Virus record (IMG/VR): IMGVR_UViG_3300027963_000035
Coordinates: 124,001-188,000 of that record
Strand: one strand, 5' to 3'
Length of the DNA: 64,000 nucleotides
Below, one piece after another: positions 19,622 to 37,455 of this stretch. The notes under the pieces are model-generated. The model was not told where the DNA came from, made no database searches, and was given only the letters and a program-made list of their open reading frames with translations. The position numbers were made by a program, and so were the translations under genes. How positions within the stretch are numbered: position 1 is the stretch's first letter; every line of letters starts with the position of its first letter.

Positions 19622-20305
19622 ATGCAAAAGAAAAGAAAAAAAAGAAGTATTGTATGGTCTATCCCGTCAGAAGAATTTCAAGATTTAGTTAAAAATTCTT
19701 CAACTATAGGTCAAATTTTAAAGTATTTTGGATTAACAAACAAGGGAGGCAACAGCGATACAGTTAAACGTAGAATAAAATATGAAAATATTGATATGTC
19801 TCACATTACATTAGGCAAAGGATCTAATAAAGGAAAAAGATTTAATTATAAAAAATCTGATGATGAGTTCTTTTGTGAAAACTCCACAACTCAAAGAAAT
19901 CATATTAAAAAAAGAATCATCAGAAATAATTTAATCAAACATGAATGCTCTGAGTGCGGATTAGTCGATACATGGAATAATAAGAAAATTATTCTGCAAC
20001 TTGAACATAAAAACGGAATAAATAATGACAATCGTCTAGAAAATCTTACATTTTTATGTCCTAATTGTCATAGCCAAACAGATACTTTTTCTGGAAGAAA
20101 GAAGAACAAACCTGTAAAAATTAAAAAAGGTAGAGGTGGGCCTAAGTTGTGGTTGAGAAAAGTAGAAAGACCAACAAAAGAAAAATTAGATGAATTAATT
20201 AAAAAATATCCCATAACTCAGGTCGGAAAGATGCATGGTGTAAGCGACACAGCTGTTCACAAGTGGATTAAATATTATAATTCCGGGGCTACGACTCGAA
20301 CGTAG
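19622..20305 (+). CDS. HNH homing endonuclease with C-terminal HTH
   Basis: CSECG..LQLEHKNG.NNDNRLENL.FLCPNCH; C-terminal VGKMHGVSDTAVHKW. Confidence 0.9.
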   Translation: MQKKRKKRSIVWSIPSEEFQDLVKNSSTIGQILKYFGLTNKGGNSDTVKRRIKYENIDMSHITLGKGSNKGKRFNYKKSDDEFFCENSTTQRNHIKKRIIRNNLIKHECSECGLVDTWNNKKIILQLEHKNGINNDNRLENLTFLCPNCHSQTDTFSGRKKNKPVKIKKGRGGPKLWLRKVERPTKEKLDELIKKYPITQVGKMHGVSDTAVHKWIKYYNSGATTRT

Positions 20306-20554
20306 AAAAGCAGATCCACTTACCACTATAGTTTTCACTACCATTACTGTTTGTAGTCTGGACTTTATCTTCACCATAGCTTGGCTTTAGGTGTCGCCTG
20401 TTAAGTCTCTACACCTTCCTAAAAATAAATTCTAGGCTTGGCTCGGTATTAGCATTTTAAAGCTTTCACCGAATTTAAGCGATTCTACATTAAAGATTTC
20501 TCTTTAAGCACTCCAGTTTGAAGTCTGCTGTTATACCAATTTAACTACCTCGGA
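20281..20554 (-). tRNA. trnQ: tRNA-Gln(UUG) interrupted by a group I intron; CCA not encoded
   Basis: 5' exon 20554-20521 TCCGAGG..GCAGACTT plus 3' exon 20318-20281 TGGATCTGC..GTTCGAGTC..CCCCGGAA reconstitutes GCAGA CT TTG GA TCTGC. Confidence 0.9.
20319..20520 (-). ncRNA. group I self-splicing intron (IC3-like, 202 nt, no ORF)
   Basis: P1 with U.G at the 5' splice site; P AAATTCGGTGAAA, Q AATACCGAGCCAAG, R GGTGTAGAGACT, S AAGATAAAGTCC; terminal G. Confidence 0.9.
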
Positions 20555-20566
20555 CCATTAAATCTA

Positions 20567-20637
20567 AGCCCACATCTGGAATCGCACCAGAATTTGATGA
20601 TTACAAGTCAACTGTAATGCTTTTATACTATGCGGGC
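20567..20637 (-). tRNA. trnT: tRNA-Thr(UGU)
   Basis: GCCCGCA/TGTGGGC acceptor stem, CT TGT AA loop, T arm TCTGG TGCGATT CCAGA; no CCA. Confidence 0.8.
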
Positions 20638-20696
20638 CAATCATTCAAAAAAACCGAAAACTTTTGCCTCTCGAACGGAAATTAAAAGGGAAGGTT

Positions 20697-22001
20697 TTAA
20701 GTCAAATCTTTCATCAATCGGGCTGCTTTATCGAAAGCAGCCACATTATTTTTTCGAAGAGCTACGAGTTGTTCCATCAAGTTAAAAACAGTGTCACCGA
20801 AAACAACATTCTCAGAAAGATTACTTAAAGTCTTTGGTTCATTACTCAAATTTTTAGCAATCGAATCCTGAATATCACTTCTGCTCCCGGAAGGAGTCTT
20901 TTTTGTTGACTTTTTATTGGGATCAAACTTATTCTCAATGAACGTAACCATAGACTTCAATACATCCTCAGATTCCATTGATTTTTTTACCCAATCACGA
21001 ACCGTTGGTGATTGAAGTTCAATATACTTGATCGATGAATCTGAGCTATCCATTCGCTTGGATACTATCCCATATTTTTGTCTGTTCAAAAAAAATACTT
21101 TGTCATACTCTCGCAAAATACCGTCAGATATATGCCCTGCACCTTCATCGCTATAGATATAGTCTTTGACTAAACTAAATCTATCATCTCCTTCTTTATT
21201 TTCACAAGTATTCCCATGAATGGACAAGTATAAATTAAAAGTCTTGTCTCTGATAGATTTGATCAGAGCGTCATCACTCAAAGATTTTTCGGCCATTTCC
21301 TTGTCGTGCTGGTCTTCTTGTTGGCCATTAGAATCCTTCTTTTTATTTTCACGTTTGTTTTTTGTGCGCTTAATGTACTTAATCTTATCCAAATTCACAA
21401 AGTAAAGTATATACTCTGCAACACTTTTCTTATTCTTTAGAATCCATTGATCAGCAGAAAGTTCCTCTGTTTCTTTCGACATATTAACCTTTCCTTTATT
21501 GTTTAGATTTAAATTGTTTAATCTACCGTTCATTGCATTATAAATAATGTCTTTAATCTTGTCAACATCTTTCAATAAAGAAAATTCTTTAGAATGTTTG
21601 GTGTTTACCTGGCGAGCATAATAAGGCTCGCCAGGGCCATTTCTTTTTTCAATTTCATAGTTTTCAATCACGTCATGCGAATATATCAAAGATCTATTGC
21701 ATGGGTCATTTAACACAATCTCCAAGCAGTTTTTCCTTATGGTTCTTCTTCCATAAAAATCAACAGTCTCATAAGGGAATTTATTTTTCCACTTTTCTAT
21801 TTTTCTTCTTTCAACTTCTATAAGAATATCCTTCTCGGATTCTGGATCGCTTACAATGAAATCCACTTTATTTACTCCATGTGGATGCCTCACAACATTG
21901 AGATTCATTTCCTTGCATATTCGTTTCAAGAATTCATGAAATCTTCTTTCCCCCACATTACCATATGCTAATCTTTTTTTGTTTATTTTTTTATTTCTCA
22001 T
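20697..22001 (-). CDS. protein with N-terminal PD-(D/E)xK-like nuclease domain
   Basis: G..GE..F...L, KVDFIV ... LIEVERR. Confidence 0.55.
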   Translation of the reverse strand: MRNKKINKKRLAYGNVGERRFHEFLKRICKEMNLNVVRHPHGVNKVDFIVSDPESEKDILIEVERRKIEKWKNKFPYETVDFYGRRTIRKNCLEIVLNDPCNRSLIYSHDVIENYEIEKRNGPGEPYYARQVNTKHSKEFSLLKDVDKIKDIIYNAMNGRLNNLNLNNKGKVNMSKETEELSADQWILKNKKSVAEYILYFVNLDKIKYIKRTKNKRENKKKDSNGQQEDQHDKEMAEKSLSDDALIKSIRDKTFNLYLSIHGNTCENKEGDDRFSLVKDYIYSDEGAGHISDGILREYDKVFFLNRQKYGIVSKRMDSSDSSIKYIELQSPTVRDWVKKSMESEDVLKSMVTFIENKFDPNKKSTKKTPSGSRSDIQDSIAKNLSNEPKTLSNLSENVVFGDTVFNLMEQLVALRKNNVAAFDKAARLMKDLT

Positions 22002-22048
22002 AACATATGAGAGTAAATTATCATAGATATTAGATACTGGAGAAACAT

Positions 22049-22142
22049 ATGCTATACGTTAAAACAAAATTAAATGAAAGCTGGGGAAGAGTTAACATAT
22101 GACTATAATGTATTCCAGCCTTCTCCTGATGGGGAATTGTAA
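22049..22142 (+). pseudogene. internally deleted SET-domain gene remnant
   Basis: GGAGA RBS then MLYVKTKLNES, joined out of frame to KAGEELTYDYN (SET C-terminal signature). Confidence 0.55.
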
Positions 22143-22516
22143 AAAACCCTACAGTATCTCAAAAATTATACCCGCCGGATTTTTTTAGAAACCGTTTTTA
22201 GAAAATTATAGGTTTAGTGGGGCGGGTTTAAAGTTAACTCTCATATACTTTGAAAAAATATAGAAACCCCCTTTAAAGTTCATTAAAAAGTTCATGGGTT
22301 GGGAAAAAGAAATATAAAGGGAAAAGAAAAAGGGCGTAATGGCGTTGAACCGGTACCCGTACCAAACCCTACCCCCAGGGTTTTTCAGTTTTAGTTTTTC
22401 AGTTTTTAACTTTGTAAAAATATACCGTACCGAAAACTGTTTTCATTTTTCAAAGAACCGTACCGGATTCTTTCTCACATACCACGAATCCGTACCAGAA
22501 TCCTACCCGCCAGTAA

Positions 22517-22548
22517 TAAGGGGGGAGAGTTTAGCCCCTCCCCCCTTA
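22517..22548 (-). terminator. GC-rich hairpin after gene 22555..23028
   Basis: taaggggggag ... ctcccccctta inverted repeat. Confidence 0.6.
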
Positions 22549-22554
22549 GACAAC

Positions 22555-23028
22555 CTAGACTATCTGCCAATCGCAGACTACCTTGGTTGCCCCCTTGCAA
22601 CTTTGCTTGGGGAGTTGTTTCACCAACTCCCGCTTCACGTTCTCGACGCCCTCTTTGACTTCTGTGACACGATCAAGGATAGACCCTACCGCAGACTCCC
22701 CCTTGACCAACGCCGTTCTAATGCAATCTACGAGCACCCCAGTGGCAAGTGGGCCAGTCTTACGCATGGCAACCAGATCACTACGGGTGATAGTCTCTCC
22801 CTTATCCATGCGACTGATAAGGCTATCCCAAGCAGCACTAGCGGTTTCCTGCCACAGAGCCACCGATTCCAGCCAAGGGATGCTAGTGGTAGCGTCCCTT
22901 TCATAATCGTCGCCAACCTTGACCGTTCCACTGACCCGAACCGTGAAATCAACCGTATGATCCCCAACCGGAATGTTATCCCGGTCGAACTTCACTTTGC
23001 TCAGAGCCAGCATTTGAATGTCGTTCAT
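22555..23028 (-). CDS. hypothetical protein
   Basis: 157 aa, GGAG RBS, promoter motif at about 23070. Confidence 0.75.
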   Translation of the reverse strand: MNDIQMLALSKVKFDRDNIPVGDHTVDFTVRVSGTVKVGDDYERDATTSIPWLESVALWQETASAAWDSLISRMDKGETITRSDLVAMRKTGPLATGVLVDCIRTALVKGESAVGSILDRVTEVKEGVENVKRELVKQLPKQSCKGATKVVCDWQIV

Positions 23029-23085
23029 CTTCTAAACTCCAGAGGGTTGAAGGTTCCTTACACTCAGTAATCGTACCAGATACTA

Positions 23086-23271
23086 TCACCCTGCCATCTT
23101 GATTAGACACTTCAAGGACAGACCATAAAGAAACATCCCCGCACCCGATTCGGGATCAATACCACAAGAAACCATGCTGGCTTCTAATGCGTCTTGGATC
23201 ATTCTCTCTGAAGGATACTTTTTACCCTTCAAGAAGTCTTTGGCCTTAATGGCAATCTCAACAGGAGTCAT
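23086..23271 (-). CDS. hypothetical protein
   Basis: Start MTPVEIA after GGAGA; motif at 23307. Confidence 0.6.
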   Translation of the reverse strand: MTPVEIAIKAKDFLKGKKYPSERMIQDALEASMVSCGIDPESGAGMFLYGLSLKCLIKMAG

Positions 23272-23475
23272 CTGTTTTCTCCAGAGGTTGAAGTTCCTTA
23301 CACTCAACCGTACCAGATTAGAACTTTTCCCGGCGGGTTGCCTTGTTAGCGACCCGCTTGCCAAACTTGCGAAGATGCTTGCAATAACTCATTCCAACCG
23401 CCTTGCCAGCACAACGAGTCTTACGCATTTGAAACTTCCTTTTGGTTAAGGTTACAAACATTAACCGTACCAGAA

Positions 23476-23511
23476 GGAGAGGGGGGAGTTTTTTGTTTCT
23501 CCCCCCTCTCC
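23476..23511 (-). terminator. GC-rich hairpin after HTH paralog
   Basis: ggagaggggggag / ctcccccctctcc. Confidence 0.65.
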
Positions 23512-23516
23512 CCTTT

Positions 23517-23762
23517 TCACTTCCAACCCTTCATTTCCTTGTTGGCAGCGGCCACGATACTTGCCTTGTTCCGGCGAGACTTCAACTCTTTCTTAGTCTT
23601 GGGAACACAAGCACCGTTCTGACGGAGATACTTGAGACGGAGGCAAACCGCTGCCGGAGTGATTCCCAACTCCTTAGCAACACTGGTTTGGTTCCCACCA
23701 TTGTTGAGATGCCGCATGATGACATTGACGAACGTTTCAACGCTAACAGTCTGACGCTTCAT
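23517..23762 (-). CDS. small sigma-region-4-like HTH protein (paralog 1)
   Basis: VSVETFV..GGNQTSVAKELGITPAAVCLRLKYLR; motif at 23811. Confidence 0.75.
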   Translation of the reverse strand: MKRQTVSVETFVNVIMRHLNNGGNQTSVAKELGITPAAVCLRLKYLRQNGACVPKTKKELKSRRNKASIVAAANKEMKGWK

Positions 23763-23935
23763 GGTTTTGGTTCCTTATGGTTATGGTTATGGTTCAATCA
23801 ACGATAATCTACCGTACTAGTTTTCTTCTTCCGTTGGATCATAGTTACATTCATCCTCTGCATCTTCATTGTCATAACTTGGATCGTCAATCCAAGGCCA
23901 GAGGACTGTTTCTTGCATCATATCAAAGTCATCCA

Positions 23936-24124
23936 TTAGACTCTCCTTTGAGTGTTGGGTTCACAACCATCCACCGTACTGAATACTTCAACAGCGACCA
24001 GATGGGGAAGGTATCCTTTCAGAATCTCTTTGAACTCAACCTTGCCGAACTTTTCGACCGCCTCTTTATGAGTCAAGACTATTGTTTTACCCGTGTCACA
24101 ACAGGTTACTTCATACTTCTTCAT
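23936..24124 (-). CDS. hypothetical protein
   Basis: RBS and motif at 24157; reads through the motif at 23973. Confidence 0.6.
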   Translation of the reverse strand: MKKYEVTCCDTGKTIVLTHKEAVEKFGKVEFKEILKGYLPHLVAVEVFSTVDGCEPNTQRRV

Positions 24125-24171
24125 GATGAAACTCCCAGAGTTATCGGCAAGAGTTTACCGTACCGAAAGCC

Positions 24172-24384
24172 TCAGATGACCCCCTCCAAGTAGGATTCAA
24201 ACTGGACAAGCAGTTCAATCTTATTATTCTTAGGCTTGATTCCCTTTTCCTGAAGGATTCTTTTCACAATCTGGCTGACGTTGAACCTTGAGTGCTTGAG
24301 TCCCTTAGTCTCCAACTTCAATGCACTCTTGAGACTGAGCAGACGATACTTTTCAACATTCAGGCCAGTGATAACGGTAGTCAT
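24172..24384 (-). CDS. hypothetical protein
   Basis: Start MTTVITG after GAGGA; motif at 24418. Confidence 0.65.
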   Translation of the reverse strand: MTTVITGLNVEKYRLLSLKSALKLETKGLKHSRFNVSQIVKRILQEKGIKPKNNKIELLVQFESYLEGVI

Positions 24385-24434
24385 TTTTAGTCCTCTTTGT
24401 TGATGGAACAAGAGTTTACCGTACCTGATTCATT

Positions 24435-24656
24435 TCAACCAAGATAACGATACTTAGCGTCCTCAACCTTTTCATCAATATTGTAGACGGTCAAACCGAT
24501 GATGTTATGGTCGTTCCACAAAGTTTCAAAAAGATGACTAATCTTTTTGCGGTCAGTATTCTTGATATAACCCTTTTTACCGTCCTTGAACATGATCTCC
24601 AGAATATAACCACTGACCCAAGACAAACCATCGAACCACTTGATGTTCTTGAACAT
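24435..24656 (-). CDS. hypothetical protein
   Basis: Start MFKNIK after AAGGA; motif at 24694. Confidence 0.6.
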   Translation of the reverse strand: MFKNIKWFDGLSWVSGYILEIMFKDGKKGYIKNTDRKKISHLFETLWNDHNIIGLTVYNIDEKVEDAKYRYLG

Positions 24657-24691
24657 TGTTTTTTCCTTTGGGCTAGGGTTAAGACAAGAGT

Positions 24692-24901
24692 TTACCGTAC
24701 TGGATTCCAAAGATTATCTTCCCTGAGTTCCTTACGGAGCAGGGTTGCTTCCTCCAGCAACTTCCTCTGTTCAATGAGGAAGTTCTTTACTGCGGAGTCA
24801 TACTCCCCACTATTTTGGGTATCCAGAATATTCTTCTTAGTCTCCCAAATAAGAGTGCTAAGAGCCCGGTCGATGATGTTTTTTTGCTCTGGGGTCATCA
24901 C
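24692..24901 (-). CDS. hypothetical protein
   Basis: AGGAG RBS, motif at 24922; ends VR-stop inside the next motif. Confidence 0.6.
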   Translation of the reverse strand: MMTPEQKNIIDRALSTLIWETKKNILDTQNSGEYDSAVKNFLIEQRKLLEEATLLRKELREDNLWNPVR

Positions 24902-25219
24902 TTTTCTCCTTTTGGTTTTTTACCGTACCAAAAACATAAAGTTTAACCCTAGATTTAACTAGGGTTGTTGCTTTTAACACTAGCCAGTTCACCGTATAGG
25001 TTAACTGCAAGATACAGTGCTTCTCTCTTGTTAGCAGCCCATACATACCCGACAACGCCGACTCGCCAGTAAACTTCCCATTCAGTAAGCATGGTATTGG
25101 CTCCGTGGTTAATGGTTCACACCCAATCTACGTACCAAAAACTAAAAAGAAAAATCCCCCGATCATAATGAAAACTCTACGCTTAGCGTGGAATCACCAA
25201 TATGATCGGGGGAGAGTCT

Positions 25220-25624
25220 TTATTCTGCCCCTAGTGCCACTTTCACGGCATTGACCATTTGACCATAGAAACTACCGGCAAAGTTGCCCCCACACATTTC
25301 TGCTAGTTCCCGCTGAAATGCGGTTGGGGTCATTCCGCCCTTACGATTACCCTCTCTGTAGACCGTAGCCTTAGCCTTTACTTTCACAAAGTCCAGTTTG
25401 TGATTCTGACGCTCTACGGTGCGATCTGGAGCCGTAATACTAAAAGTGCCTCTTCCGGCCCGATTAGTATAAACAACCCGCCAGACTTGATCCTCGCTCG
25501 CCTTGGAGTGTCGGATGGTTCCCTTTACCATCAAGCCACCAACACGGCGAAACTCTGTGCCGTTTTCTGTCTCAAAAGGATAGAACTTGATTGGCTTGGG
25601 TTCATCAACGATTTGCCACGGCAT
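25220..25624 (-). CDS. hypothetical protein
   Basis: 134 aa, AAGGA RBS, motif at 25661, long hairpin downstream (25155-25213). Confidence 0.7.
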   Translation of the reverse strand: MPWQIVDEPKPIKFYPFETENGTEFRRVGGLMVKGTIRHSKASEDQVWRVVYTNRAGRGTFSITAPDRTVERQNHKLDFVKVKAKATVYREGNRKGGMTPTAFQRELAEMCGGNFAGSFYGQMVNAVKVALGAE

Positions 25625-25691
25625 TGTCTGATTCCTTAGTGGTGTTGGTTACAACTATAACCCGTACTAGATACTATCCCCGTAGGGATCA

Positions 25692-25907
25692 TCAACCCGT
25701 GATGACACTCAGCACTTCATCGTTGAGCGGGTTGATTACCGGATCGAACTCGACCGGAACTTCAACTTCACGCTGATTCTGGATGATGTTGACAATCGCA
25801 TTGACCAGAACCCGCTCGTTGACAGTGTAGTGACCCCGATTGTGAATCTCCTTTGAGGCTTCCATGTCCTTGAGCAACTTCAGGCGACGAGTCTTAGTAA
25901 CTTTCAT
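25692..25907 (-). CDS. hypothetical protein
   Basis: AGGAG RBS, motif at about 25943. Confidence 0.65.
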   Translation of the reverse strand: MKVTKTRRLKLLKDMEASKEIHNRGHYTVNERVLVNAIVNIIQNQREVEVPVEFDPVINPLNDEVLSVITG

Positions 25908-25955
25908 CTCTAACTCCTGAGAAGTGGAGGGAACAACACTAACCCGTACCGGATT

Positions 25956-27026: not shown

Positions 27027-27037
27027 TGTGACTAACT

Positions 27038-30898: not shown

Positions 30899-30938
30899 GT
30901 TATCTTCCTTTATTGTCTTTCACACAACCGTACCAAAA

Positions 30939-31142
30939 TCAACTATCCTTTAGACATTCCCTGATCATTTGGATTAGATTAGAAGCGTCACCCAAAGCCG
31001 CAGATTCAAAATCATTTTCAAGATTTTCAGCGACATTATCAAGGATTGTCTCGATATTTCGTAGTGCAATAGCAGTATCCTTTGACGATACAGGCCAGTC
31101 AATACCAAGAGCCTCTGCTATTTGTTTCTTGGTTATTCTCAT
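30939..31142 (-). CDS. hypothetical protein
   Basis: AAGGA RBS. Confidence 0.6.
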   Translation of the reverse strand: MRITKKQIAEALGIDWPVSSKDTAIALRNIETILDNVAENLENDFESAALGDASNLIQMIRECLKDS

Positions 31143-31187
31143 TATTTTCCTTTTGTATTGATATACCGGCTGAGAATGGATCGACTT

Positions 31188-31266
31188 ATGGAACGATGGG
31201 ATTTGAACCCATAACTCCTCTTGCTTTTAAAGCAAGTGGAACTCTATCCAGTTGAGTTACGCTCCA
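31188..31266 (-). tRNA. atypical tRNA-like RNA with elongated anticodon arm (loop UU UAA AA)
   Basis: TGGAGCG/CGTTCCA acceptor, ACTC/GAGT D stem, ATGGG TTCAAAT CCCAT T arm; anticodon arm 23 nt instead of 17. Confidence 0.7.
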
Positions 31267-31516
31267 CGATAGTTTCACAAATAGTGTCCGGTATCACGCA
31301 CTATTCAACCTTATTTAGGTTTCTATCCGACCCCTGACGCATTTATATTGAATCTGTGCCGGGAATCCAACCCGGATAGAGAGCAGCATAAGCCTCACCA
31401 TAGCCTAGTTCGGCAACCCCATACACCCATTAGATGCAGACGCTGTTTGCTGGGCTATCTCTCTACTGTCGGCAGACACACAGTTTGTATCTCGTTGACT
31501 CCACACCGTACCAAAA

Positions 31517-31795
31517 TCAATCGTTCTCGTATATGCCCTTAGTATATTCTTTTGGAATGATTGGACACCAACCTTTAGCCTTTTCATTATCATAAGGCAT
31601 CCAGAATGGAGCATCACAAGCGTCTACTACTCCGAACTTATTATTCACAAAGATATGAGGACAAAGTTTAGTCCCCTTTATTTCACGTTCTTCATAATGG
31701 TATTTGCCAATACCGATCCCAATATTAGGGCCGAAGTAATAAACTTCCTGATCCTTTTCTGGAGGGAAGTTATGACTGCTTTTCCATGTGTTCAT
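31517..31795 (-). CDS. hypothetical protein (predicted leaderless)
   Basis: ATG 8 nt after TACGGT at 31804. Confidence 0.65.
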   Translation of the reverse strand: MNTWKSSHNFPPEKDQEVYYFGPNIGIGIGKYHYEEREIKGTKLCPHIFVNNKFGVVDACDAPFWMPYDNEKAKGWCPIIPKEYTKGIYEND

Positions 31796-31801
31796 GTTTT
31801 T

Positions 31802-32011
31802 CTACCGTACCGAATACAGACTGGCGATTGTTTCACCGTCAAAGTTTTTGTTTAATTCTTTTATATACTTCTCGGCTGATTCTTTATTCTGCCATTTAAC
31901 TACAAATGGCTTTTGGTGAATATCACCTTTATCGGTAACTGGCTTGTGATCCTTATAAACCACAAACCAGCGGCCTTCTTCTTTCACAGAATAGTTATTT
32001 GATCGTTTCAT
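31802..32011 (-). CDS. hypothetical protein
   Basis: Follows tRNA-Glu; ends SVR-stop in the motif. Confidence 0.55.
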   Translation of the reverse strand: MKRSNNYSVKEEGRWFVVYKDHKPVTDKGDIHQKPFVVKWQNKESAEKYIKELNKNFDGETIASLYSVR

Positions 32012-32023
32012 GTTGTTTAAAAG

Positions 32024-32095
32024 TACCCCGTGCCGGTAACGCTCCGGCGTCCCTGAGATGAAAGCCCAGTATACTAACTTCTATACGAACGGGGC
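32024..32095 (-). tRNA. trnE: tRNA-Glu(UUC)
   Basis: GCCCCGT/ACGGGGT acceptor, CTGGG CT TTC AT CTCAG anticodon arm, T loop AGCGTTA; motif 10 nt upstream. Confidence 0.85.
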
Positions 32096-32136
32096 ATGGT
32101 TGTTTACCGTACCAAAAACAATATAGTCTATAACAA

Positions 32137-32174
32137 ATAAAAAATAAACCCCCTCCGTTTTACGGGAGGGGGTT
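32137..32174 (-). terminator. intrinsic terminator after HTH paralog
   Basis: aaccccctccg / cgggagggggtt hairpin with T-rich tail on the minus strand. Confidence 0.7.
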
Positions 32175-32206
32175 CGTATGGCCGATTATTATATCAGCCT
32201 TTAACT

Positions 32207-32461
32207 TCAACCAACCCCAAGGCTGGCGAGAATCTCAGCCGCCCGCTCTGCGGTGTTGCTGGTGCGGCCCGACCCCTCGAACCGGGGGACGTTCACACCG
32301 TGCTTCTTCCGCAGTTGCGAGAGACGCACCGACACCGAACCGGCCGTGATGCCCAGAGCATCGGCAACGTCCTGCACCGAACCGCCGGCCCGCTGCGTCT
32401 CGACCACCGTGGTCAGGAACTTCTCCAGAGCGACACCCTTCTGTCCAACTTGACGACCCAT
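32207..32461 (-). CDS. small sigma-region-4-like HTH protein (paralog 3)
   Basis: GGSVQDVADALGITAGSVSVRLSQLRKK; very GC-rich codons; motif at 32535. Confidence 0.8.
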   Translation of the reverse strand: MGRQVGQKGVALEKFLTTVVETQRAGGSVQDVADALGITAGSVSVRLSQLRKKHGVNVPRFEGSGRTSNTAERAAEILASLGVG

Positions 32462-32571
32462 AGTAGTAATCTCCTGCGTTATTCAACCCTTTGTTGCCGT
32501 TTGCCGAAGTGGCTCACCGTCGCAACGTCCATCAACCGTACCAAAAGACAAGTTTCTCTGTTTATTTCTTT

Positions 32572-32895
32572 TTATTTCTGGAATGAGTTCAGAGTTATAT
32601 TCGTTAACTCAGTTGAAACTTCTTCAAGTTCCTTCTGTATTTCCTTCTTCCTTCTCGCTAGTCTCTTAACCTTTTCGGCTTCTTTAATCTTCACACTATT
32701 GTCAAACTGTTTAATGCAATCAAGCATTAAAGTTTCAACATCATTGCCTGTACTAAAAGTTACTTCGCCATAATCGCCATCTCTAACCGTAACCCTAAAT
32801 CCACGGACATGATTACCGATTATAAAGTTTCTTCCGAAACCTTTTGATAAGAAAAGTTTTACTTTAGGGTGTAGCATACTCATATTATTCTGCAA
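32572..32895 (-). CDS. hypothetical protein
   Basis: 107 aa, C-terminal coiled coil. Confidence 0.6.
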   Translation of the reverse strand: MQNNMSMLHPKVKLFLSKGFGRNFIIGNHVRGFRVTVRDGDYGEVTFSTGNDVETLMLDCIKQFDNSVKIKEAEKVKRLARRKKEIQKELEEVSTELTNITLNSFQK

Positions 32896-33247
32896 ACCTT
32901 AGTGGACTATTGTTATTATTTTCGTCTACAGGGTTCGCAGAAGAAACAATTTCATTCACAGAAGGTTTGAAACTAACCGTCACAGAACTAGCATCACGGC
33001 GGGTCATGCCAGTCGCTAGGCAGAAACTAAGTTTAGCATCACTTTCTTCCTTCCTAAATTCCTCTAGGATTTGATCCTGAGTTACAGGTTCACCCATAAG
33101 GTTACTAACCGTACCTCCAAAGATTTCCATAACTTCACAGATTCCGCCGTACCACATAGTGGCATCACCGGGATCGCAGTTATAAATATTGAGCCTGTCC
33201 TCAATGTTGTTGAGTTTAACAGTGCAATAATAACGATAATGTTCCAT
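32885..33247 (-). CDS. hypothetical protein
   Basis: AAGGA RBS, motif at 33274. Confidence 0.65.
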   Translation of the reverse strand: MEHYRYYCTVKLNNIEDRLNIYNCDPGDATMWYGGICEVMEIFGGTVSNLMGEPVTQDQILEEFRKEESDAKLSFCLATGMTRRDASSVTVSFKPSVNEIVSSANPVDENNNNSPLRFAE

Positions 33248-33441
33248 TTTTTCTATCCTTTCGTTACTACTCTACCGTACCAAAAACTATCGGGCCGTTT
33301 CTTCCTTAACTGTTTCCATGACAATTAAATTTTCATCATAAGGAAGATTATCCAAAAAATTATGTAATTTTTCTGGATTTTCATATGGGTCGTATTTGAT
33401 TTGCCCTTGTTCATAGTAAATGTGAACGTAAAACATTACTA

Positions 33442-33654
33442 TTATTTAGCAGACCTGTATTCAACCTGAATAGTAGAATTTCTACTAACCATCTTCACAA
33501 AATTTGAAACACTTTCCCAATCAGGACTAGAGTCAATATACAACTCTTTTTCAGACCCGGGGAAGGCACTCAGTAAATATATTTCAAAACCACCGGAAGG
33601 ATACTCACCATCAACATATGGTTTATTTGTATTGATTACAATGTATTGTTTCAT
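33442..33654 (-). CDS. hypothetical protein
   Basis: ATGA overlap with the upstream gene. Confidence 0.6.
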   Translation of the reverse strand: MKQYIVINTNKPYVDGEYPSGGFEIYLLSAFPGSEKELYIDSSPDWESVSNFVKMVSRNSTIQVEYRSAK

Positions 33655-34004
33655 TCAAAACTTTTCAACAGTACCACATTTGGAAAGTAGTTCCAAACAT
33701 TACTGGGGTATTCTGAACTATTGTTTAATATGGGCTCGCCACTAATATACCAGTTGAAATCTTTCTGGTAAATATTTCTACCTTCACAAAATTTACGAAG
33801 GATACAATTAAGCCGGCTCTTGGTAACATATGTAGTGTATCCCTGATTATTAATCCCTACAGTCTTGTTGGTAATTTTAGCAATCAGGTTATTAAACAAA
33901 AAGACAAGAATCACATCATCGGCAACTTCAACCCTAGTGTTGCCACAAGAATGATTCTTCTTGTTCAAGATGCTATCAATCATCTCTTGTTCAATCTTAC
34001 GCAT
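33651..34004 (-). CDS. conserved phage protein
   Basis: MRKIEQEM...GNT.V...G..T..TKSRLN pattern; motif at 34038. Confidence 0.7.
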   Translation of the reverse strand: MRKIEQEMIDSILNKKNHSCGNTRVEVADDVILVFLFNNLIAKITNKTVGINNQGYTTYVTKSRLNCILRKFCEGRNIYQKDFNWYISGEPILNNSSEYPSNVWNYFPNVVLLKSFE

Positions 34005-34127
34005 CTTCTTCCTCAAGAGGGAGGTCGGGAAACTCCAACCGTACCAGAAACTATGTGGTTGAGAGAATGATTTAATGCGTTGATTGGTATATATAATACA
34101 TATAACCAAAAATCAAAAGGAGTATAT

Positions 34128-34595
34128 ATGAATAGCTGTAAATATTGCAATAGAACTATAAACAATAAAGGCTCTCTTGCATCTCATGAATTATGTTGTC
34201 AAAATAATCCCAAAAGAGTCAAAAGAATAAAATCACCAAAAGCAGGTGTTCAAAAAGGTTGCATACCTTGGAACAAAGGCAAAAAATTTGATGAAATAAC
34301 CTCCGCCAGTTTAAAAGAAAAAATAGAAAGTGGACAATATAAAACGTTTTGTGAATATCATGCTCGTAAATTAATAAAAAAATACTTAATACAAACACAT
34401 GGACATAAGTGTATAATGTGCGGATTATCGGAATGGCTAGGAGTCAGAATTCCCTTAGTTTGTGATCATATAGATGGTAATGCTGAAAATCATGATTTAT
34501 CTAACATGAGAATTATATGTAATAATTGCGATTCAATAACTGCAACTTTTAAAGGAAGAAACAGAGGCAAAGGAAGGAAAAATAGATATAAATAA
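34128..34595 (+). CDS. HNH endonuclease
   Basis: CIMCG..W....PL..DHIDGN..N....N.R.ICNNCD. Confidence 0.85.
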   Translation: MNSCKYCNRTINNKGSLASHELCCQNNPKRVKRIKSPKAGVQKGCIPWNKGKKFDEITSASLKEKIESGQYKTFCEYHARKLIKKYLIQTHGHKCIMCGLSEWLGVRIPLVCDHIDGNAENHDLSNMRIICNNCDSITATFKGRNRGKGRKNRYK

Positions 34596-34664
34596 AGTTT
34601 AGAATAGTATATACCTATAGATTAACAATGACGTTAATCATGTTTTTTTAAAAGGAGTTTTATT

Positions 34665-35120
34665 ATGAGTGCAACAACATCACAAGGCACAGGTTTAGGA
34701 ATGGCCCCTAACCAAGTTTGTTTAACAGCCGCTGGCCCTCACATTGTCGCTGCTGGCATTGCCAGAACAGGAACTGTAGGATCAGACGGACAAACTAACA
34801 ATTGGTGGATCACAGTTGATTTAGAAGAAGTATTACCTTTAAATCCAGATATGTATAGTGTTATACTAACACAATGCGACGAAGAAGGTGCTTTACAAGG
34901 CGAGAATGGTCAAAGACCAAACCACGGCCCTCACGTTGAAAAATACGTTAAGGTCAATGGAACTCGTTATAACAAGTATGGTATTGACGATGAGTTCGAT
35001 AACTATGATAACTGGAAGAACAATGGTTTAGCTGGTTTCGTTATTCACTCAGGTGACGGCGATCCACACACCATGCAATACGTTGTAGTAAGAAATGGTT
35101 TCTTAAGACTAAGTAACTAA
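34665..35120 (+). CDS. hypothetical protein, possibly structural
   Basis: AAGGAG RBS, followed by a terminator. Confidence 0.7.
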   Translation: MSATTSQGTGLGMAPNQVCLTAAGPHIVAAGIARTGTVGSDGQTNNWWITVDLEEVLPLNPDMYSVILTQCDEEGALQGENGQRPNHGPHVEKYVKVNGTRYNKYGIDDEFDNYDNWKNNGLAGFVIHSGDGDPHTMQYVVVRNGFLRLSN

Positions 35121-35148
35121 TAATTTAACTAAAAACACATTCGGTGTT

Positions 35149-35178
35149 AACCCCAAGACTAACCTCTTGGGGTTTTTT
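35149..35178 (+). terminator. intrinsic terminator between convergent genes
   Basis: aaccccaag / cttggggtt followed by a T run. Confidence 0.75.
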
Positions 35179-35407
35179 ATTGTACCAAACCCTTTTGTAT
35201 CTGCCAATTCTTATGCTCCATAACAACGTCGATATTATTACGAAGTAGATTATCAGGAGCAGTATCACAATACAAACTAATCATCTCGAGAATATCGTCT
35301 AAACTATTCTTGAGAATATTATCTTGAGTTAAACTCTTTGAATAAGAAAGTTTACTGGCGATCTTGCAAAAGAGTATGGCCTGTTCCTTATCCATAAGAT
35401 TCACCAT
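35177..35407 (-). CDS. hypothetical protein
   Basis: 76 aa, coupled to HTH paralog 4. Confidence 0.55.
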   Translation of the reverse strand: MVNLMDKEQAILFCKIASKLSYSKSLTQDNILKNSLDDILEMISLYCDTAPDNLLRNNIDVVMEHKNWQIQKGLVQ

Positions 35408-35631
35408 TGTGGCACAGGGGCTCCCTTAGCCCGGAGTTTATGACAACGCTGCCTTACTGCTTGAGGAGAGATCCCCAATTCATTTGCAACACTAATACTG
35501 TTTCCGCCATTCTTAACGGCTTCTACAATACTCTTGAGGAAAACGTCAAGGGGGATTCTCTTATTCTTCTTCTGAGTGGCTTCAGTTTCACCACCAAGAA
35601 TGAAATCACTAAAGTCAATATCGTCTAGCAT
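35401..35631 (-). CDS. small sigma-region-4-like HTH protein (paralog 4)
   Basis: IPLDVFL..GGNSISVANELGISPQAVRQRCHKLR; motif at 35659. Confidence 0.75.
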   Translation of the reverse strand: MLDDIDFSDFILGGETEATQKKNKRIPLDVFLKSIVEAVKNGGNSISVANELGISPQAVRQRCHKLRAKGAPVPQW

Positions 35632-35847
35632 CTAGAGTTCTCCGTGTGACACCCTCACACCGTACCAGATTCTACCGTTCTCTCTACCCAGATTTCACAA
35701 CCAAACTTCATTCTGGCGAATCTATTTGCGTCCCATTCGCTATAAGCAGATACATACCCTGCTATTCGGTTGTTCTTCCAAACAATCCAAGTATATTTTT
35801 CCATAATACCTCTATTATAATCTAATAGAGGATATTGGTCAATACAT

Positions 35848-36201
35848 TTAAACACCACTCTTAAGAGCCCGATTAGTAGCAATCTTCACACCCAGTTTAC
35901 GATTAAACATTCCGCCTGCTGGAACATTAAACTTACCCCTCAGATCACGACCATCAGGAGTAGTAATCTCCACAATAGTAAAGCCGCCCTTGCAACTGAG
36001 TTCCCAGTTCACACTTTGAACTAAGTTGTTAAATTGTTCATATTCACGCTTGCTCATATATTCGTGAATAATTTCTGGAGAGTTAGCATGATCCGGAGTA
36101 ACACAACGGAGATAAACCCGTCCGTGATAAACACGAACCTTATAACCAGTCTTACGAAGAACTTCTACGTTTGGCATTTCAATTTTAGTCAAGGTAGTCA
36201 T
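35848..36201 (-). CDS. hypothetical protein
   Basis: 117 aa, AAGGA RBS. Confidence 0.65.
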   Translation of the reverse strand: MTTLTKIEMPNVEVLRKTGYKVRVYHGRVYLRCVTPDHANSPEIIHEYMSKREYEQFNNLVQSVNWELSCKGGFTIVEITTPDGRDLRGKFNVPAGGMFNRKLGVKIATNRALKSGV

Positions 36202-36216
36202 AATTAAATTTCCTTT

Positions 36217-36441
36217 TTACCAGGGGCGGGCAGGGTCACGACGAAGAATTTTTTTCTTCTTCTTATAAAAAGCCTTAGTCTCTGATTCAACTTGTTCTTT
36301 GAACTCTTTGATTCTAGATCGTAAATCTGCGACTTTTTCACTAAATGTAAGTGTCGAAGTTTCAAAGTCCTTGCTAATCTTGTTAAGTGGAGGCATACCA
36401 CTAACAAATTTGTGCCACCAATTAGAATGTTGATCACTCAT
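36217..36441 (-). CDS. hypothetical protein
   Basis: TAATG overlap with the upstream gene. Confidence 0.55.
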   Translation of the reverse strand: MSDQHSNWWHKFVSGMPPLNKISKDFETSTLTFSEKVADLRSRIKEFKEQVESETKAFYKKKKKILRRDPARPW

Positions 36442-36761
36442 TAAAGATCCCTCTTTCTTTTAACATCCTCAACAGTATGATTATACTCTATTCCACTTTC
36501 TCGGCAATATCTGCTGATGGGATAGTATCCACTAAAACGTCCATAACCATTATCAACAAGCCACTTACCGGCATTGTATGACCATTGATCCCCATACCCA
36601 TAAGTGAAAGGAATCTTATGAACCAAATGGTCATTTACCCAAATTTCAACGGTATGGTAGGTATTACCATAAGAGCGTTGAAACCATCGACGAGCATGAA
36701 GATAAATTTTCTTAACTTCAACAAAACTGGTGAGGAGTTTTTCTTTTTGGATTGTTTCCAT
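36441..36761 (-). CDS. conserved phage protein (predicted leaderless)
   Basis: RWF....GNTYH.V....YGYG; ATG 8 nt after TACGGT at 36770. Confidence 0.7.
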   Translation of the reverse strand: METIQKEKLLTSFVEVKKIYLHARRWFQRSYGNTYHTVEIWVNDHLVHKIPFTYGYGDQWSYNAGKWLVDNGYGRFSGYYPISRYCRESGIEYNHTVEDVKRKRDL

Positions 36762-36809
36762 GCTCACTCACCGTACCAGAGGGAAAGAAAATTTTTACTA
36801 TTTTAGGAT

Positions 36810-37421
36810 ATGGATCCTGCTTCAAAATACCCAAATCAATATGATTTATGTTCCTGTGGTAAACACAAAACAATCTTGTCTAAACATTGTATCAAATGCT
36901 GCAATAATGGTCAAATAAAATATCTAACAATCAAAGATGCGATGGTATCAGCACTGCATGGACAAAGTGCAAAATTTAATGTTGTCAGAAACAGAGCCAG
37001 GGTTCAATATAGGAATATAAAGTGTCAATTTTGCGGATACGATAAACACGTTGAAGTTTGTCACATTAAACCAATCCACTCATTCCCAGAAGAAACTTTA
37101 ATATCTGAGGTGAATGACCAGTCTAATATTTTAATTCTTTGTCCCAATTGTCATTGGGAGTTTGACAAAAAGAATCAAAAACCTAGAAAAGAAAAAATAA
37201 AAAAACAAAGACCAAGGAAGGTTGAATGGCCCACAAAAGAATTACTAAAAAAACTTGTATGGGAAATGCCAACCATTCAAATTGCTAAACAATATGGAGT
37301 ATCTGATAAAGCTGTTGGTAAATGGGTAAAGAAATATAATCTAACCAAACCACCAAGAGGATATTGGAGAAAAAACAAAGAGTGCGACCCCTGGGAATCG
37401 AACCCAGAACCCCAAAATTAA
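36810..37421 (+). CDS. HNH endonuclease with C-terminal HTH
   Basis: CQFCGY...VEVCHIKPI...N...LCPNCHWEFD; IAKQYGVSDKAVGKW. Confidence 0.9.
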   Translation: MDPASKYPNQYDLCSCGKHKTILSKHCIKCCNNGQIKYLTIKDAMVSALHGQSAKFNVVRNRARVQYRNIKCQFCGYDKHVEVCHIKPIHSFPEETLISEVNDQSNILILCPNCHWEFDKKNQKPRKEKIKKQRPRKVEWPTKELLKKLVWEMPTIQIAKQYGVSDKAVGKWVKKYNLTKPPRGYWRKNKECDPWESNPEPQN

Positions 37422-37455
37422 AAGTTTCGTGCTCTGCCAATTGAGCTAGGGTCGC
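37383..37455 (-). tRNA. trnK: tRNA-Lys(UUU)
   Basis: GCGACCC/GGGTCGC acceptor, GCTC/GAGC D stem, CT TTT AA loop, CTGGG TTCGATT CCCAG. Confidence 0.92.

What the first reader, a model, noticed from the sequence alone, without database searches (positions are those of the whole stretch)
19622..37455. Free-standing HNH-HTH endonucleases converge on and overlap tRNA 3' ends, twice
Seen: HNH 19622-20305 runs antisense into the 3' exon of the intron-containing tRNA-Gln, and HNH 36810-37421 runs antisense into tRNA-Lys. Both end in a similar KVExPTKExL...GVSDxAVxKW HTH and take their stop codon from inside the tRNA. Established: free-standing homing endonucleases occur in phage tRNA clusters (T4 SegB), and collaborative homing pairs an ORF-less intron with a neighbouring endonuclease. 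Inference: these enzymes cut tRNA alleles of competing phages, and the intron immunises the Gln allele.
Basis: partly seen in the sequence, partly recalled or inferred. Interest (0 to 1): 0.6.

Follow-up and report, generated by a model that had tools for sequence, protein, structure and literature searches.

The report
Homing endonucleases docked on phage tRNAs
In a huge freshwater phage, selfish HNH nuclease genes sit tail-to-tail against tRNA genes, four of which carry self-splicing introns, and comparison with a near-identical phage shows that nuclease and tRNA allele come and go together as mobile cassettes.

Summary
The window is part of a 251-kb contig of a T4-like-portal huge phage. 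Both HNH ORFs end inside a convergent tRNA: 25 nt into the 3' exon of tRNA-Gln(UUG), which is split by a group I intron, and 40 nt into tRNA-Lys. On the whole contig all four group I introns lie in tRNA anticodon loops (Gln, Met, Leu, Arg). Each has a convergent HNH gene on its 3' side, though the Arg one is 244 nt away beyond another tRNA. A relative with 90-98% identical flanks (G001) lacks these HNH genes or holds remnants. Where an intact HNH is present in only one phage, the neighbouring tRNA allele is replaced too. The P0001 family (annotated F-TflIV/hegA-like) lies next to a tRNA, mostly Gln or Leu, in 68 of 80 IMG/VR loci. This intron family occurs in 12 of 131 HNH-adjacent tRNAs and 0 of 274 others. 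Best reading: tRNA-gene-targeting free-standing homing endonucleases with a hitch-hiking ORF-less intron. Intron-based immunity is plausible but unproven. Introns persist without HNH, and near-identical HNHs sit beside intron-less tRNAs. No cleavage or splicing was tested. New variant of a known kind.

The parts
19566..19611 (+). Inverted repeat (21-nt arms, 4-nt loop) just upstream of the HNH ribosome-binding site. It is the first feature of the variable cassette, whose left boundary against G001 is at about 19563/19564.
   Evidence: I5; cassette boundary from the blastn comparison
19622..20305 (+). Free-standing HNH endonuclease P0001 (227 aa): N-terminal helical/HTH domain, Cys4 beta-beta-alpha-metal core, C-terminal HTH. 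phrog_10822, F-TflIV/hegA-like. The last 25 nt are antisense to tRNA-Gln.
20281..20318 (-). 3' exon of tRNA-Gln(UUG), positions 35-73; overlapped by the end of the HNH ORF.
   Evidence: hand reading by the omega-G rule
20319..20520 (-). ORF-less group I intron (202 nt) between anticodon positions 34 and 35. It is 87% identical to the tRNA-Arg intron of the same genome.
20521..20554 (-). 5' exon of tRNA-Gln(UUG), positions 1-34, ending ...GCAGACUU.
20566..20638 (-). tRNA-Thr(UGU), part of the same variable cassette. The right boundary against G001 is at 20637.
36777..37375 (+). About 600-bp insertion relative to the empty site in G001. It carries the P0002 gene without a stop codon of its own and starts 6 nt beyond the 3' end of tRNA-Lys.
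36810..37421 (+). Free-standing HNH endonuclease P0002 (203 aa; Pfam HNH_2 1.2e-9; C-terminal HTH plus RGYW tail). Its last 15 codons are pre-existing spacer plus antisense tRNA-Lys.
37382..37455 (-). tRNA-Lys(UUU), no intron. This allele is only about 77% identical to G001's, with compensatory stem changes, while the flanks are 90-94% identical.
34011..35133 (+). Third HNH gene of the P0001 family (34128-34595, no C-terminal HTH) plus a 151-aa passenger ORF (34665-35120). The block is absent from G001 and is not next to a tRNA.
32023..32095 (-). tRNA-Glu(UUC), the HNH-less allele of a locus where G001 carries a convergent HNH overlapping an unalignable tRNA-Glu allele.
   Evidence: (L193)

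Best explanation
The HNH ORFs are free-standing homing endonuclease genes of phage tRNA clusters. P0001, the Leu-locus HNH and two further copies belong to the F-TflIV/hegA-like phrog_10822 family. P0002 and the Met-locus HNH share phrog_15471. The Arg-locus HNH is phrog_6050. I infer that each enzyme cuts a cognate tRNA gene in co-infecting relatives that lack it. Repair then copies the endonuclease gene together with the adjoining, resistant tRNA allele, so endonuclease and tRNA move as one cassette. The gene is inserted within 0-6 nt of the tRNA 3' end and has no stop codon of its own, so translation runs on into the antisense tRNA until a chance stop. The overlap is a by-product of the insertion and not a designed feature. 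The ORF-less group I introns in the anticodon loops lie about 40 bp from the endonuclease gene and are carried along by the same repair events (collaborative or trans homing). They may also split the recognition site and so protect the Gln and Leu alleles, but sequence divergence of the tRNA does that job elsewhere (Lys here, Glu in G001). Shown here: anatomy, family membership, presence/absence polymorphism, replacement of the tRNA allele, the statistical link between intron and HNH, and conserved intron structure. Inferred: cleavage of tRNA genes, the position of the cut, immunity through the intron, and splicing.
For: All four RF00028 introns on the contig are in tRNAs, and each has a convergent HNH on its 3' side. 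Against G001, whose flanks are 90-98% identical: the Lys site is empty there, our insert starts 6 nt after the tRNA, and the tRNA is only 77% identical. The Gln cassette [HNH + intron-tRNA-Gln + tRNA-Thr] is replaced by [unrelated intron-less tRNA-Gln + a different convergent endonuclease-like ORF]. The Leu cassette [HNH + intron-tRNA-Leu] is replaced by [114-aa ORF + intron-less tRNA-Leu + tmRNA]. The Glu locus shows the reverse polymorphism. At the Met and Arg loci G001 keeps only remnants of the HNH genes. In the family survey, 68 of 80 loci have a tRNA within 150 nt, mostly Gln or Leu, and the intron is found only in HNH-adjacent tRNAs (12/131 against 0/274, p = 9e-7). Orthologous Gln cassettes occur in four other contigs with the stop inside the tRNA, and a Leu cassette occurs in L129. 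HNHs of the same family lie inside tRNA-Leu introns in L227 and L247, and L247 is the nearest relative of our Leu HNH. The catalytic Cys4/His/Asn columns are invariant. The AF2 model has pLDDT 87 with a beta-beta-alpha core. The intron shows compensatory changes at 19 of 47 pairs. Precedents: SegB recognises the T-arm and cuts at tRNA 3' ends, and the T5 F-Tfl genes lie in the tRNA cluster (PMC2330249). F-CphI and the psbA intron define collaborative homing (PMC6083498).
Against: No cleavage, splicing or co-infection data exist. The HNH family is also found away from tRNAs (genome 32610-33332, window 34128-34595, and 12 of 80 survey loci). Introns persist without HNH (G001 Met and Arg; Atu_ph07, LR756501 and Microcoleus phage tRNA introns). 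HNHs sit next to intron-less tRNAs (Lys; L213, L214, L245, L228; LR756511.1). So immunity through the intron is not general. Cassette differences could come from ordinary recombination at a variable locus. The survey loci are phylogenetically related, so the p-value is optimistic. The Arg-locus HNH is 244 nt from tRNA-Arg, with another tRNA in between.
Confidence: 0.6

Rival explanations
1. Strict collaborative homing. The HNH recognises the anticodon-loop region of the intron-less tRNA, the intron splits that site, and this is the (main) reason the host allele survives. Intron and HNH would then be an obligate partnership.
For: All five Gln-clade HNHs sit with an intron-tRNA-Gln. Ours and L129 pair a Leu HNH with an intron-tRNA-Leu, while G001 lacks both at that locus. 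Family members lie inside the intron in L227 and L247. The intron is found only in HNH-adjacent tRNAs. In the HNH-identical pairs L206/L213 and L236/L245, the intron-less partner has a different anticodon stem or a different tRNA altogether, which fits two alternative routes to resistance.
Against: tRNA-Lys and many other HNH-adjacent tRNAs have no intron. G001 keeps the Met and Arg introns without HNH. Many phage tRNA introns have no HNH nearby. The insertion point is at the tRNA 3' end, as for SegB, whose site is the T-arm.
Confidence: 0.3
2. Coincidental neighbours. HNH genes and introns each accumulate independently in tRNA clusters because these are permissive, recombination-prone regions. 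The HNHs target something other than tRNA genes.
For: HNH genes are common everywhere in phage genomes. Some paralogues here are not near tRNAs. tRNA regions are known hot spots of variability.
Against: The insertion point is always within a few nt of a tRNA end. Gln and Leu neighbours dominate in one HNH clade. Replacement of the tRNA allele stops at the tRNA 5' end in four loci. The intron is restricted to HNH-adjacent tRNAs.
Confidence: 0.07
3. The antisense overlap is itself functional. Convergent transcription, or pairing of the HNH mRNA tail with the pre-tRNA, would throttle a toxic nuclease or control tRNA maturation.
For: Expression of homing endonucleases in tRNA clusters is thought to be kept low by transcript processing (PMC2330249). 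The overlap is kept in five Gln orthologues.
Against: The stop position, the reading frame and the tail differ among orthologues (TAG or TGA, overlap 13-25 nt). The Met, Leu and Arg loci have gaps of 43, 1 and 38 nt, and the Met locus has a terminator-like hairpin in between. Co-directional arrangements are three times more common in the family.
Confidence: 0.03

Closest known systems
Phage T5 F-TflI/II/IV (hegA-type) HNH endonucleases of the tRNA gene region
   Same: Same catalytic family and the same habitat. P0001 hits a hegA-annotated HNH gene in the Bf23 record over its HNH core only (49% over 22% of the query). Its 39%-identical full-length homologue in Enterococcus phage Bop is annotated 'H-N-H endonuclease F-TflIV' and lies between tRNA-Asn and tRNA-Ser. 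PMC2330249 states that the T5 ORFs lie in the tRNA cluster.
   Different: Here the genes converge on the tRNA and overlap it. They sit beside intron-containing tRNAs. Their mobility is documented by empty sites in a near-identical phage. No biochemical data exist for these proteins.
Phage T4 SegB (GIY-YIG) and preferred inheritance of the tRNA region
   Same: A free-standing endonuclease gene in a tRNA cluster. SegB recognises the T-psi-C arm and cuts at the 3' end of tRNA genes, and neighbouring tRNA genes are co-inherited (PMC2330249). This matches the insertion point at the tRNA 3' end and the replacement of tRNA alleles seen here.
   Different: A different nuclease fold (GIY-YIG against HNH), so this is not the same family. 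The T4 tRNA genes have no introns.
Collaborative homing: cyanophage S-PM2 F-CphI with the psbA group I intron; T4 mobE with the I-TevIII intron (trans homing)
   Same: An ORF-less or defunct group I intron sits in a gene next to a free-standing endonuclease gene. In S-PM2 the intron blocks self-cleavage and is mobilised in return (PMC6083498; PMC2790892).
   Different: The host genes here are tRNAs, not protein-coding genes. The arrangement recurs four times in one genome, with three HNH families. The same HNH family is also found inside the intron on the opposite strand and co-directionally downstream of the tRNA. Immunity through the intron has not been shown.
Bacterial tRNA group I introns (cyanobacterial tRNA-Leu(UAA) and tRNA-fMet, Azoarcus tRNA-Ile, Agrobacterium tRNA-Arg)
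   Same: Small introns of about 200 nt in the anticodon loop, placed after a U (position 34/35 for Leu, 36/37 for CAU anticodons). RF00028 matches. The sites and sizes of the bacterial introns are from my own knowledge, together with PMC3984707.
   Different: These are carried by a phage. The 2014 review states that all phage group I introns then known were in protein-coding genes (PMC3984707). tRNA-Gln(UUG) and tRNA-Arg(UCU) hosts are, to my knowledge, unusual.
Jug huge phages: many ~206-nt ORF-less group I introns plus stand-alone HNH genes
   Same: Huge phages rich in small ORF-less group I introns and free-standing HNH genes (PMC12880540).
   Different: There the introns interrupt protein-coding genes (terL, nrdD). 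tRNA hosts and paired cassettes are not described in the passages I read.

Membership tests
HNH / His-Me finger endonuclease | Beta-beta-alpha-metal core with a catalytic His, a conserved Asn and (here) two CxxC zinc pairs | tested here: met
   PHROG phrog_10822 'HNH endonuclease', 9.2e-46. P0002 matches Pfam HNH_2 at 1.2e-9. C109, C112, H129, N141, C146 and C149 are invariant in 32 sequences. The AF2 model has strands 126-129 and 142-145 and helix 147-151, pLDDT above 90. The top Foldseek hits are all HNH nucleases but weak (best E 0.064).
Free-standing homing endonuclease gene | Own ORF outside any intron or intein, present or absent at the same locus in close relatives | tested here: met
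   Empty or remnant sites in G001 at the Lys, Met, Arg and window-34-kb loci, and the reverse case at Glu, with flanks 90-98% identical.
Free-standing homing endonuclease gene | Site-specific cleavage of the allele that lacks the gene, and super-Mendelian inheritance | not testable with these tools
   Needs enzyme assays and mixed infections. The only indirect footprint is the replaced tRNA allele.
F-TflIV/hegA-like tRNA-cluster HNH | Sequence homology to hegA/F-TflIV-annotated genes, and residence in phage tRNA clusters | tested here: met
   39% identity over 93% of the length to the Enterococcus phage Bop hegA (annotated F-TflIV), which lies between two tRNAs. The Bf23 hegA is hit over the HNH core. 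68 of 80 IMG/VR family loci are next to a tRNA. Identity to T5 F-TflIV itself was not measured.
SegB-type (GIY-YIG) tRNA-region endonuclease | GIY-YIG catalytic domain | tested here: not met
   Pfam and PHROGs give only HNH families. It may work like SegB but is not a member.
Collaborative homing pair (F-CphI/psbA type) | ORF-less self-splicing intron in the gene next to a free-standing endonuclease gene | tested here: met
   Four loci on the contig. The introns are 191-202 nt, too short to hold an endonuclease ORF.
Collaborative homing pair (F-CphI/psbA type) | The endonuclease cuts the intron-less allele at the intron insertion site, and the intron prevents self-cleavage | not testable with these tools
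Intron-internal family members (L227, L247) make an anticodon-loop target plausible.
Collaborative homing pair (F-CphI/psbA type) | Intron and endonuclease distributed together among relatives | tested here: inconclusive
   For: Gln clade 5 of 5, the Leu locus in ours against G001, and 12/131 against 0/274. Against: G001 has the Met and Arg introns without HNH, and L213, L214, L245 and L228 have the HNH without an intron.
Group I intron | Conserved catalytic core, U before the 5' splice site, terminal G, structure kept by covariation | tested here: met
   RF00028 at 68.6, 59.3, 59.2 and 50.8 bits, all above the cut-off. The exon ends U| and the intron ends G| in all copies. 19 of 47 consensus pairs have compensatory changes. 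Self-splicing itself was not tested.
tRNA-Gln(UUG) | Cloverleaf with anticodon UUG after removal of the intron | tested here: inconclusive
   ARAGORN in intron mode finds the cloverleaf but places the intron so that it reads tca, tga or tta in different orthologues. The U|...G| splice rule gives UUG in all five.

The most novel reading that the evidence does not exclude
Huge phages may hold a three-way mobile module: a tRNA allele, an ORF-less anticodon-loop group I intron and an HNH endonuclease. The endonuclease gene can sit inside the intron on the opposite strand, downstream in the same direction, or convergent and overlapping. In this reading the endonucleases are not mere parasites. They drive rapid exchange, and possibly amplification, of phage tRNA alleles, which would help the phage escape host defences that target tRNAs. 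The intron would be one of two interchangeable ways of making the resident allele uncuttable.
Probability: 0.15. Interest if true: 0.75.

Novelty: new variant of a known kind. Interest (0 to 1): 0.6.

Why it matters
A 2014 review (PMC3984707) stated that every phage group I intron then known was in a protein-coding gene, despite the many phage tRNA genes. Here one phage carries four in tRNA genes, and dozens of IMG/VR contigs carry related ones. Each of the four is paired with a free-standing HNH gene. A near-identical phage with empty or remnant sites gives ready-made substrate pairs for testing collaborative homing on very short targets. The data also show that endonuclease-linked cassette replacement turns over tRNA alleles in huge phages. 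That matters because phage tRNAs are now seen as counter-measures to host defences that cleave tRNAs, and because SegB was recently reported to amplify such loci (PMC13096335, abstract seen).

Tried and rejected
- Organelle or giant-virus origin: considered because of the low GC content, the tRNAs and a tRNA intron. Rejected because the contig encodes a T4-type portal (gp20, 3e-75) and its nearest record is the 595-kb uncultured phage LR756511.1.
- search_dna_similar failed four times with a service error before it worked.
- PDB sequence searches with P0001 and P0002 found nothing meaningful. Foldseek against PDB gave no hit at E <= 0.001.
- Promoter and terminator scans were no better than shuffled sequence.
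- Public reads: only Logan contigs of freshwater metagenomes were available. They break inside the repeated intron and gave no intron-less or HNH-less joints. An apparent joint from 20687 to 18651 is explained by the D1 and D3 repeats lying just outside the stretch I laid. No RNA run holds the locus, so splicing could not be checked.
- ARAGORN's anticodon calls for the split tRNAs (SeC, Ser, Stop, Tyr) were rejected, because its intron placement violates the rule that the intron ends in G.
- The window's own intron-less tRNA-Leu(UAA) was checked as a possible self-target. It is unrelated in sequence to the intron-bearing copy.
- The large protein searches were not used, because family scans and locus searches had already settled the identity of the proteins.
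The joined-exon tRNA was neither built nor searched.

Full report
**Context.** The window is bases 124001-188000 of a 251,265-bp IMG/VR virus contig that CheckV rates about 50% complete. The contig encodes a T4-type portal protein (Pfam Portal_T4, 3.1e-75) that carries an intein. Its nearest GenBank record is the 595-kb uncultured huge phage LR756511.1, with 50.8% portal identity. Public runs that hold the locus are freshwater metagenomes.

**Checking the observation.**
- ORF 19622-20305(+) gives P0001 (227 aa) and ORF 36810-37421(+) gives P0002 (203 aa).
- Rfam places a group I intron at 20338-20530(-), 68.6 bits against a cut-off of 50.
- ARAGORN in intron mode finds a split tRNA at window 20281-20554(-).
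- I read the sequence by the group I rule that the 5' exon ends in a U paired to the guide sequence and the intron ends in G. This gives a 5' exon at 20521-20554 (...GCAGACUU), an intron at 20319-20520 (202 nt, ending ...GGUAAG) and a 3' exon at 20281-20318 (UGGAUCUGC...). The anticodon is then UUG (Gln).
- ARAGORN places the intron elsewhere and reads tca here and tga or tta in orthologues. The splice rule gives UUG in all five orthologous loci.
- P0001's TAG stop lies in the T-arm, an overlap of 25 nt. P0002's TAA stop lies 40 nt inside tRNA-Lys(UUU), which is at 37382-37455(-).
- The two proteins share the second half of the HNH domain and the C-terminal helix-turn-helix (41% identity, E 1e-18).

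**The pattern is wider than reported.** A search of the whole contig finds four RF00028 introns, and all are in tRNA anticodon loops:

| tRNA | Genome coordinates | Splice site (hand reading) |
|---|---|---|
| Gln | window 20281-20554 | CUU\|UGGA (34/35) |
| Met(CAU) | 208765-209029 | CAU\|AA (36/37) |
| Leu(UAA) | 213430-213716 | CUU\|AAAA (34/35) |
| Arg(UCU) | 227768-228046 | CUU\|CUAA (34/35) |

Each has an HNH ORF on the opposite strand converging on its 3' side:

| Locus | HNH ORF | Position of the stop relative to the tRNA 3' end |
|---|---|---|
| Gln | P0001 | 25 nt overlap |
| Leu | 212970-213428 | 1 nt gap |
| Met | 208059-208721 | 43 nt gap, containing a terminator-like hairpin |
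| Arg | 226831-227523 | 38 nt from an interrupted tRNA-Asn; 244 nt from tRNA-Arg |
| Lys (no intron) | P0002 | 40 nt overlap |

PHROGs sorts the nucleases into three HNH families. phrog_10822 holds P0001, the Leu HNH, a copy at 32610-33332 and window 34128-34595. phrog_15471 holds P0002 and the Met HNH. phrog_6050 holds the Arg HNH.

**The introns.** They are 191-202 nt long, too short to hold an endonuclease ORF. The Gln, Arg and Leu copies are 79-87% identical to one another. The Gln copy is closer to the Arg copy of the same genome (87%) than to the Gln introns of other phages (77-78%). An alignment of eight copies shows compensatory changes at 19 of 47 consensus pairs, so the ribozyme structure is under selection.

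**A near-identical relative gives empty sites.** IMG/VR contig IMGVR_UViG_3300023174_000040 (G001, 323 kb) has flanks 90-98% identical to ours around these loci.

| Locus | Our phage | G001 |
|---|---|---|
| Lys | ~600-bp insert (window ~36777-37375) carrying P0002 | Flank resumes 8 nt after tRNA-Lys; no HNH |
| Gln | [hairpin + P0001 + intron-tRNA-Gln + tRNA-Thr], window 19564-20637 | [unrelated intron-less tRNA-Gln + a different convergent endonuclease-like ORF, P0003] |
| Leu | [HNH + intron-tRNA-Leu] | [114-aa ORF + intron-less tRNA-Leu(UAA), ~80% like our exons + a tmRNA] |
| Glu | tRNA-Glu allele only (window 32023-32095) | HNH of the P0001 family convergent on, and overlapping, an unalignable tRNA-Glu allele |
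| Met | Intron-tRNA-Met + HNH | Identical intron-tRNA-Met; only the HNH's ATG, first 9 codons and last 5 codons remain (deletion with CTT microhomology) |
| Arg | Intron-tRNA-Arg + HNH | Only the last ~130 nt of the HNH remain |
| Window 34 kb | HNH 34128-34595 + 151-aa passenger ORF (34011-35133) | Block absent |

At the Lys locus the insert begins 6 nt after the tRNA, after a shared CTCTTT. P0002's last 15 codons are therefore pre-existing spacer plus antisense tRNA, and the inserted gene has no stop of its own. The two tRNA-Lys alleles are only 77% identical, with compensatory stem changes, while identity returns to 90-94% about 20 nt upstream of the tRNA.

Every HNH gene is thus polymorphic between two very close phages. 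Wherever an intact HNH is present in only one of them, the whole adjacent tRNA gene is replaced as well, up to its 5' end. This is the footprint expected if the break falls within or at the tRNA gene and repair copies both the HNH and the donor's tRNA allele.

**Wider surveys.**
- P0001 orthologues (63-70% identical) in four other IMG/VR contigs (L025, L026, L027, L132) show the same cassette: tRNA-Thr, intron-tRNA-Gln, convergent HNH. In each the stop lies inside the tRNA (13-19 nt), but at different codons (TAG or TGA). Two of them (L026, L027) carry an extra ...RGYWQKLNS tail that P0001 and L025 have lost. The C-terminal tail is therefore incidental.
- A Leu-HNH orthologue converges on an intron-tRNA-Leu(UAA) in L129.
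- The best 80 of more than 531 IMG/VR relatives of the family were examined. A tRNA lies within 150 nt in 68 of them. The downstream tRNA is co-directional in 30 and convergent in 10. Gln (about 29) and Leu (about 19) neighbours dominate.
- This intron family is found in 12 of 131 HNH-adjacent tRNAs and in 0 of 274 other tRNAs of the same loci (Fisher p = 9e-7). The loci are not phylogenetically independent, so this value is optimistic.
- On a quick maximum-likelihood tree the intron-associated HNHs are clustered (8 changes against 15.7 expected, reached by 0 of 500 shuffles). Intron presence nevertheless flips between near-identical HNHs (L236/L245, L206/L213, L239/L214).
- In those pairs the spacer and the start of the HNH gene are almost the same, while the tRNA has a different anticodon stem or is a different tRNA altogether.
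- In L227 and L247 the HNH ORF sits inside a tRNA-Leu(UAA) intron of about 670 nt, on the opposite strand. L247 is the nearest relative of our Leu HNH, with support 85.
- P0002-like HNHs converge on intron-less tRNAs in L029, L031 and L035. Atu_ph07 gp460 ends 2 nt from a convergent tRNA-Leu(UAG).
- Group I introns in tRNA genes also occur without a neighbouring HNH in Atu_ph07, LR756501 and Microcoleus phage My-WqHQDG, and in most of the 22 tRNA-borne intron loci of a motif scan.

**What the proteins are.**
- Thirty-two family members keep C109, C112, H129, G132, N141, C146, P147, N148 and C149 invariant.
- The AlphaFold2 model (pLDDT 87.3) shows an N-terminal helical domain, a beta-beta-alpha core at residues 126-151, a floppy linker, and a three-helix C-terminal HTH at 186-221.
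- Foldseek gives only weak hits, but the top ones are all HNH nucleases.
- The full-length homologue in Enterococcus phage Bop is annotated hegA / 'H-N-H endonuclease F-TflIV' and lies between two tRNAs. A hegA-annotated HNH gene in the Bf23 record is also hit, over the HNH core.

**Interpretation.** The best-supported reading is that these are free-standing homing endonucleases specialised on tRNA genes. This ecology is already known for T5 F-TflI/II/IV and T4 SegB. SegB recognises the T-psi-C arm and cuts at tRNA 3' ends (PMC2330249). The ORF-less intron, about 40 bp from the HNH gene, would be carried along by the same repair tracts. The arrangement corresponds formally to collaborative homing as defined for F-CphI and the psbA intron (PMC6083498).

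Whether the intron protects the allele remains open.
- In favour: the intron-internal family members, the 5-of-5 Gln clade and the Leu contrast with G001.
- Against it as a general rule: intron-less tRNAs next to an HNH, and HNH-less intron alleles.
- These counter-cases are, however, also what a cycle of gain, fixation and endonuclease loss would leave behind.

The overlap of the stop codon with the tRNA is a by-product of insertion hard against the tRNA end.

**Novelty.** The 2014 review states that all phage group I introns then known were in protein-coding genes (PMC3984707). My searches of the held library found no report of phage tRNA introns paired with HNH genes. A 2026 paper describes many small ORF-less introns and stand-alone HNH genes in Jug phages, but in protein-coding genes (PMC12880540). 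I rate this a new variant of a known kind. Nothing here was tested biochemically.

Noticed in passing
L008:1237-1377 (-) = genome 227562-227703; counterpart in G001 at L040:1811-1951: A tRNA-Asn(GUU)-like gene (Rfam tRNA 53.8 bits) with a ~70-nt structured insert in the anticodon loop. The insert contains a T-arm-like hairpin flanked by CCACUG/CAGUGG. The whole folds with z = -3.7. It is far too small for a group I intron, is conserved at ~91% in G001, and lies between the Arg-locus HNH and tRNA-Arg. How, or whether, it is removed is unknown.
   Followed up: partly
L019:12665-12763 (-) = genome 220664-220763: tRNA-Gly(UCC) with a 27-nt insertion according to ARAGORN. Rfam tRNA 38.2 bits over 99 nt. 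No endonuclease gene next to it.
   Followed up: no
L050:2140-2499 (+) in relative G001: A phage-borne tmRNA (tag GTVNYAMAA) directly after the intron-less tRNA-Leu(UAA). In our phage this segment is replaced by the HNH and the intron-tRNA-Leu. ARAGORN found no tmRNA on our 251-kb contig.
   Followed up: partly
window 18292-18350, 19187-19245, 19429-19487, 20649-20707: Four copies of a ~59-nt intergenic element (AAAAACCGAAAAC...TCTCGAACGGAAATTAAAA, 64-80% identical). One copy marks the right edge of the Gln cassette and two lie upstream of the HNH. It could be a phage-specific promoter, a terminator or a recombination motif.
   Followed up: no
L011:11459-13969 (+) (genome, outside the window): The T4-type portal protein gp20 is interrupted by an intein (Pfam Intein_splicing, 1.5e-11). 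The same architecture is matched end to end in LR756511.1.
   Followed up: no
L227:~1875-2545 and L247:~1870-2550 (IMG/VR contigs): tRNA-Leu(UAA) genes whose group I intron (~670 nt) holds an HNH ORF of the P0001 family on the strand opposite to the intron. I know such antisense intron-borne endonuclease genes from nuclear rDNA introns, not from phages.
   Followed up: partly
window 32023-32095 (-): The tRNA-Glu(UUC) found by ARAGORN has a non-canonical T-loop (CCGG-AGCGUUA-CCGG in place of the GTTCRANYC motif) and does not reach Rfam's tRNA threshold. G001 has a canonical tRNA-Glu, with an HNH, at this site.
   Followed up: no
L028:5482-6342 (-) in G001 (protein P0003): A different endonuclease-like ORF occupies the same slot against an intron-less tRNA-Gln. 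Only its C-terminal ~50 aa match an HNH-annotated PHROG (phrog_2081, 2.6e-11). It has no Pfam hit and its catalytic family is unresolved.
   Followed up: partly
window 3723-6947 (-) and 12423-15917 (-): Two proteins of more than 1000 aa with DUF5122 beta-propeller repeats plus fn3 or F5/8 type C domains. A GT61 glycosyltransferase (11224-12435) and laminin-G lectin-like proteins lie nearby. These are probably receptor-binding or surface structures.
   Followed up: no
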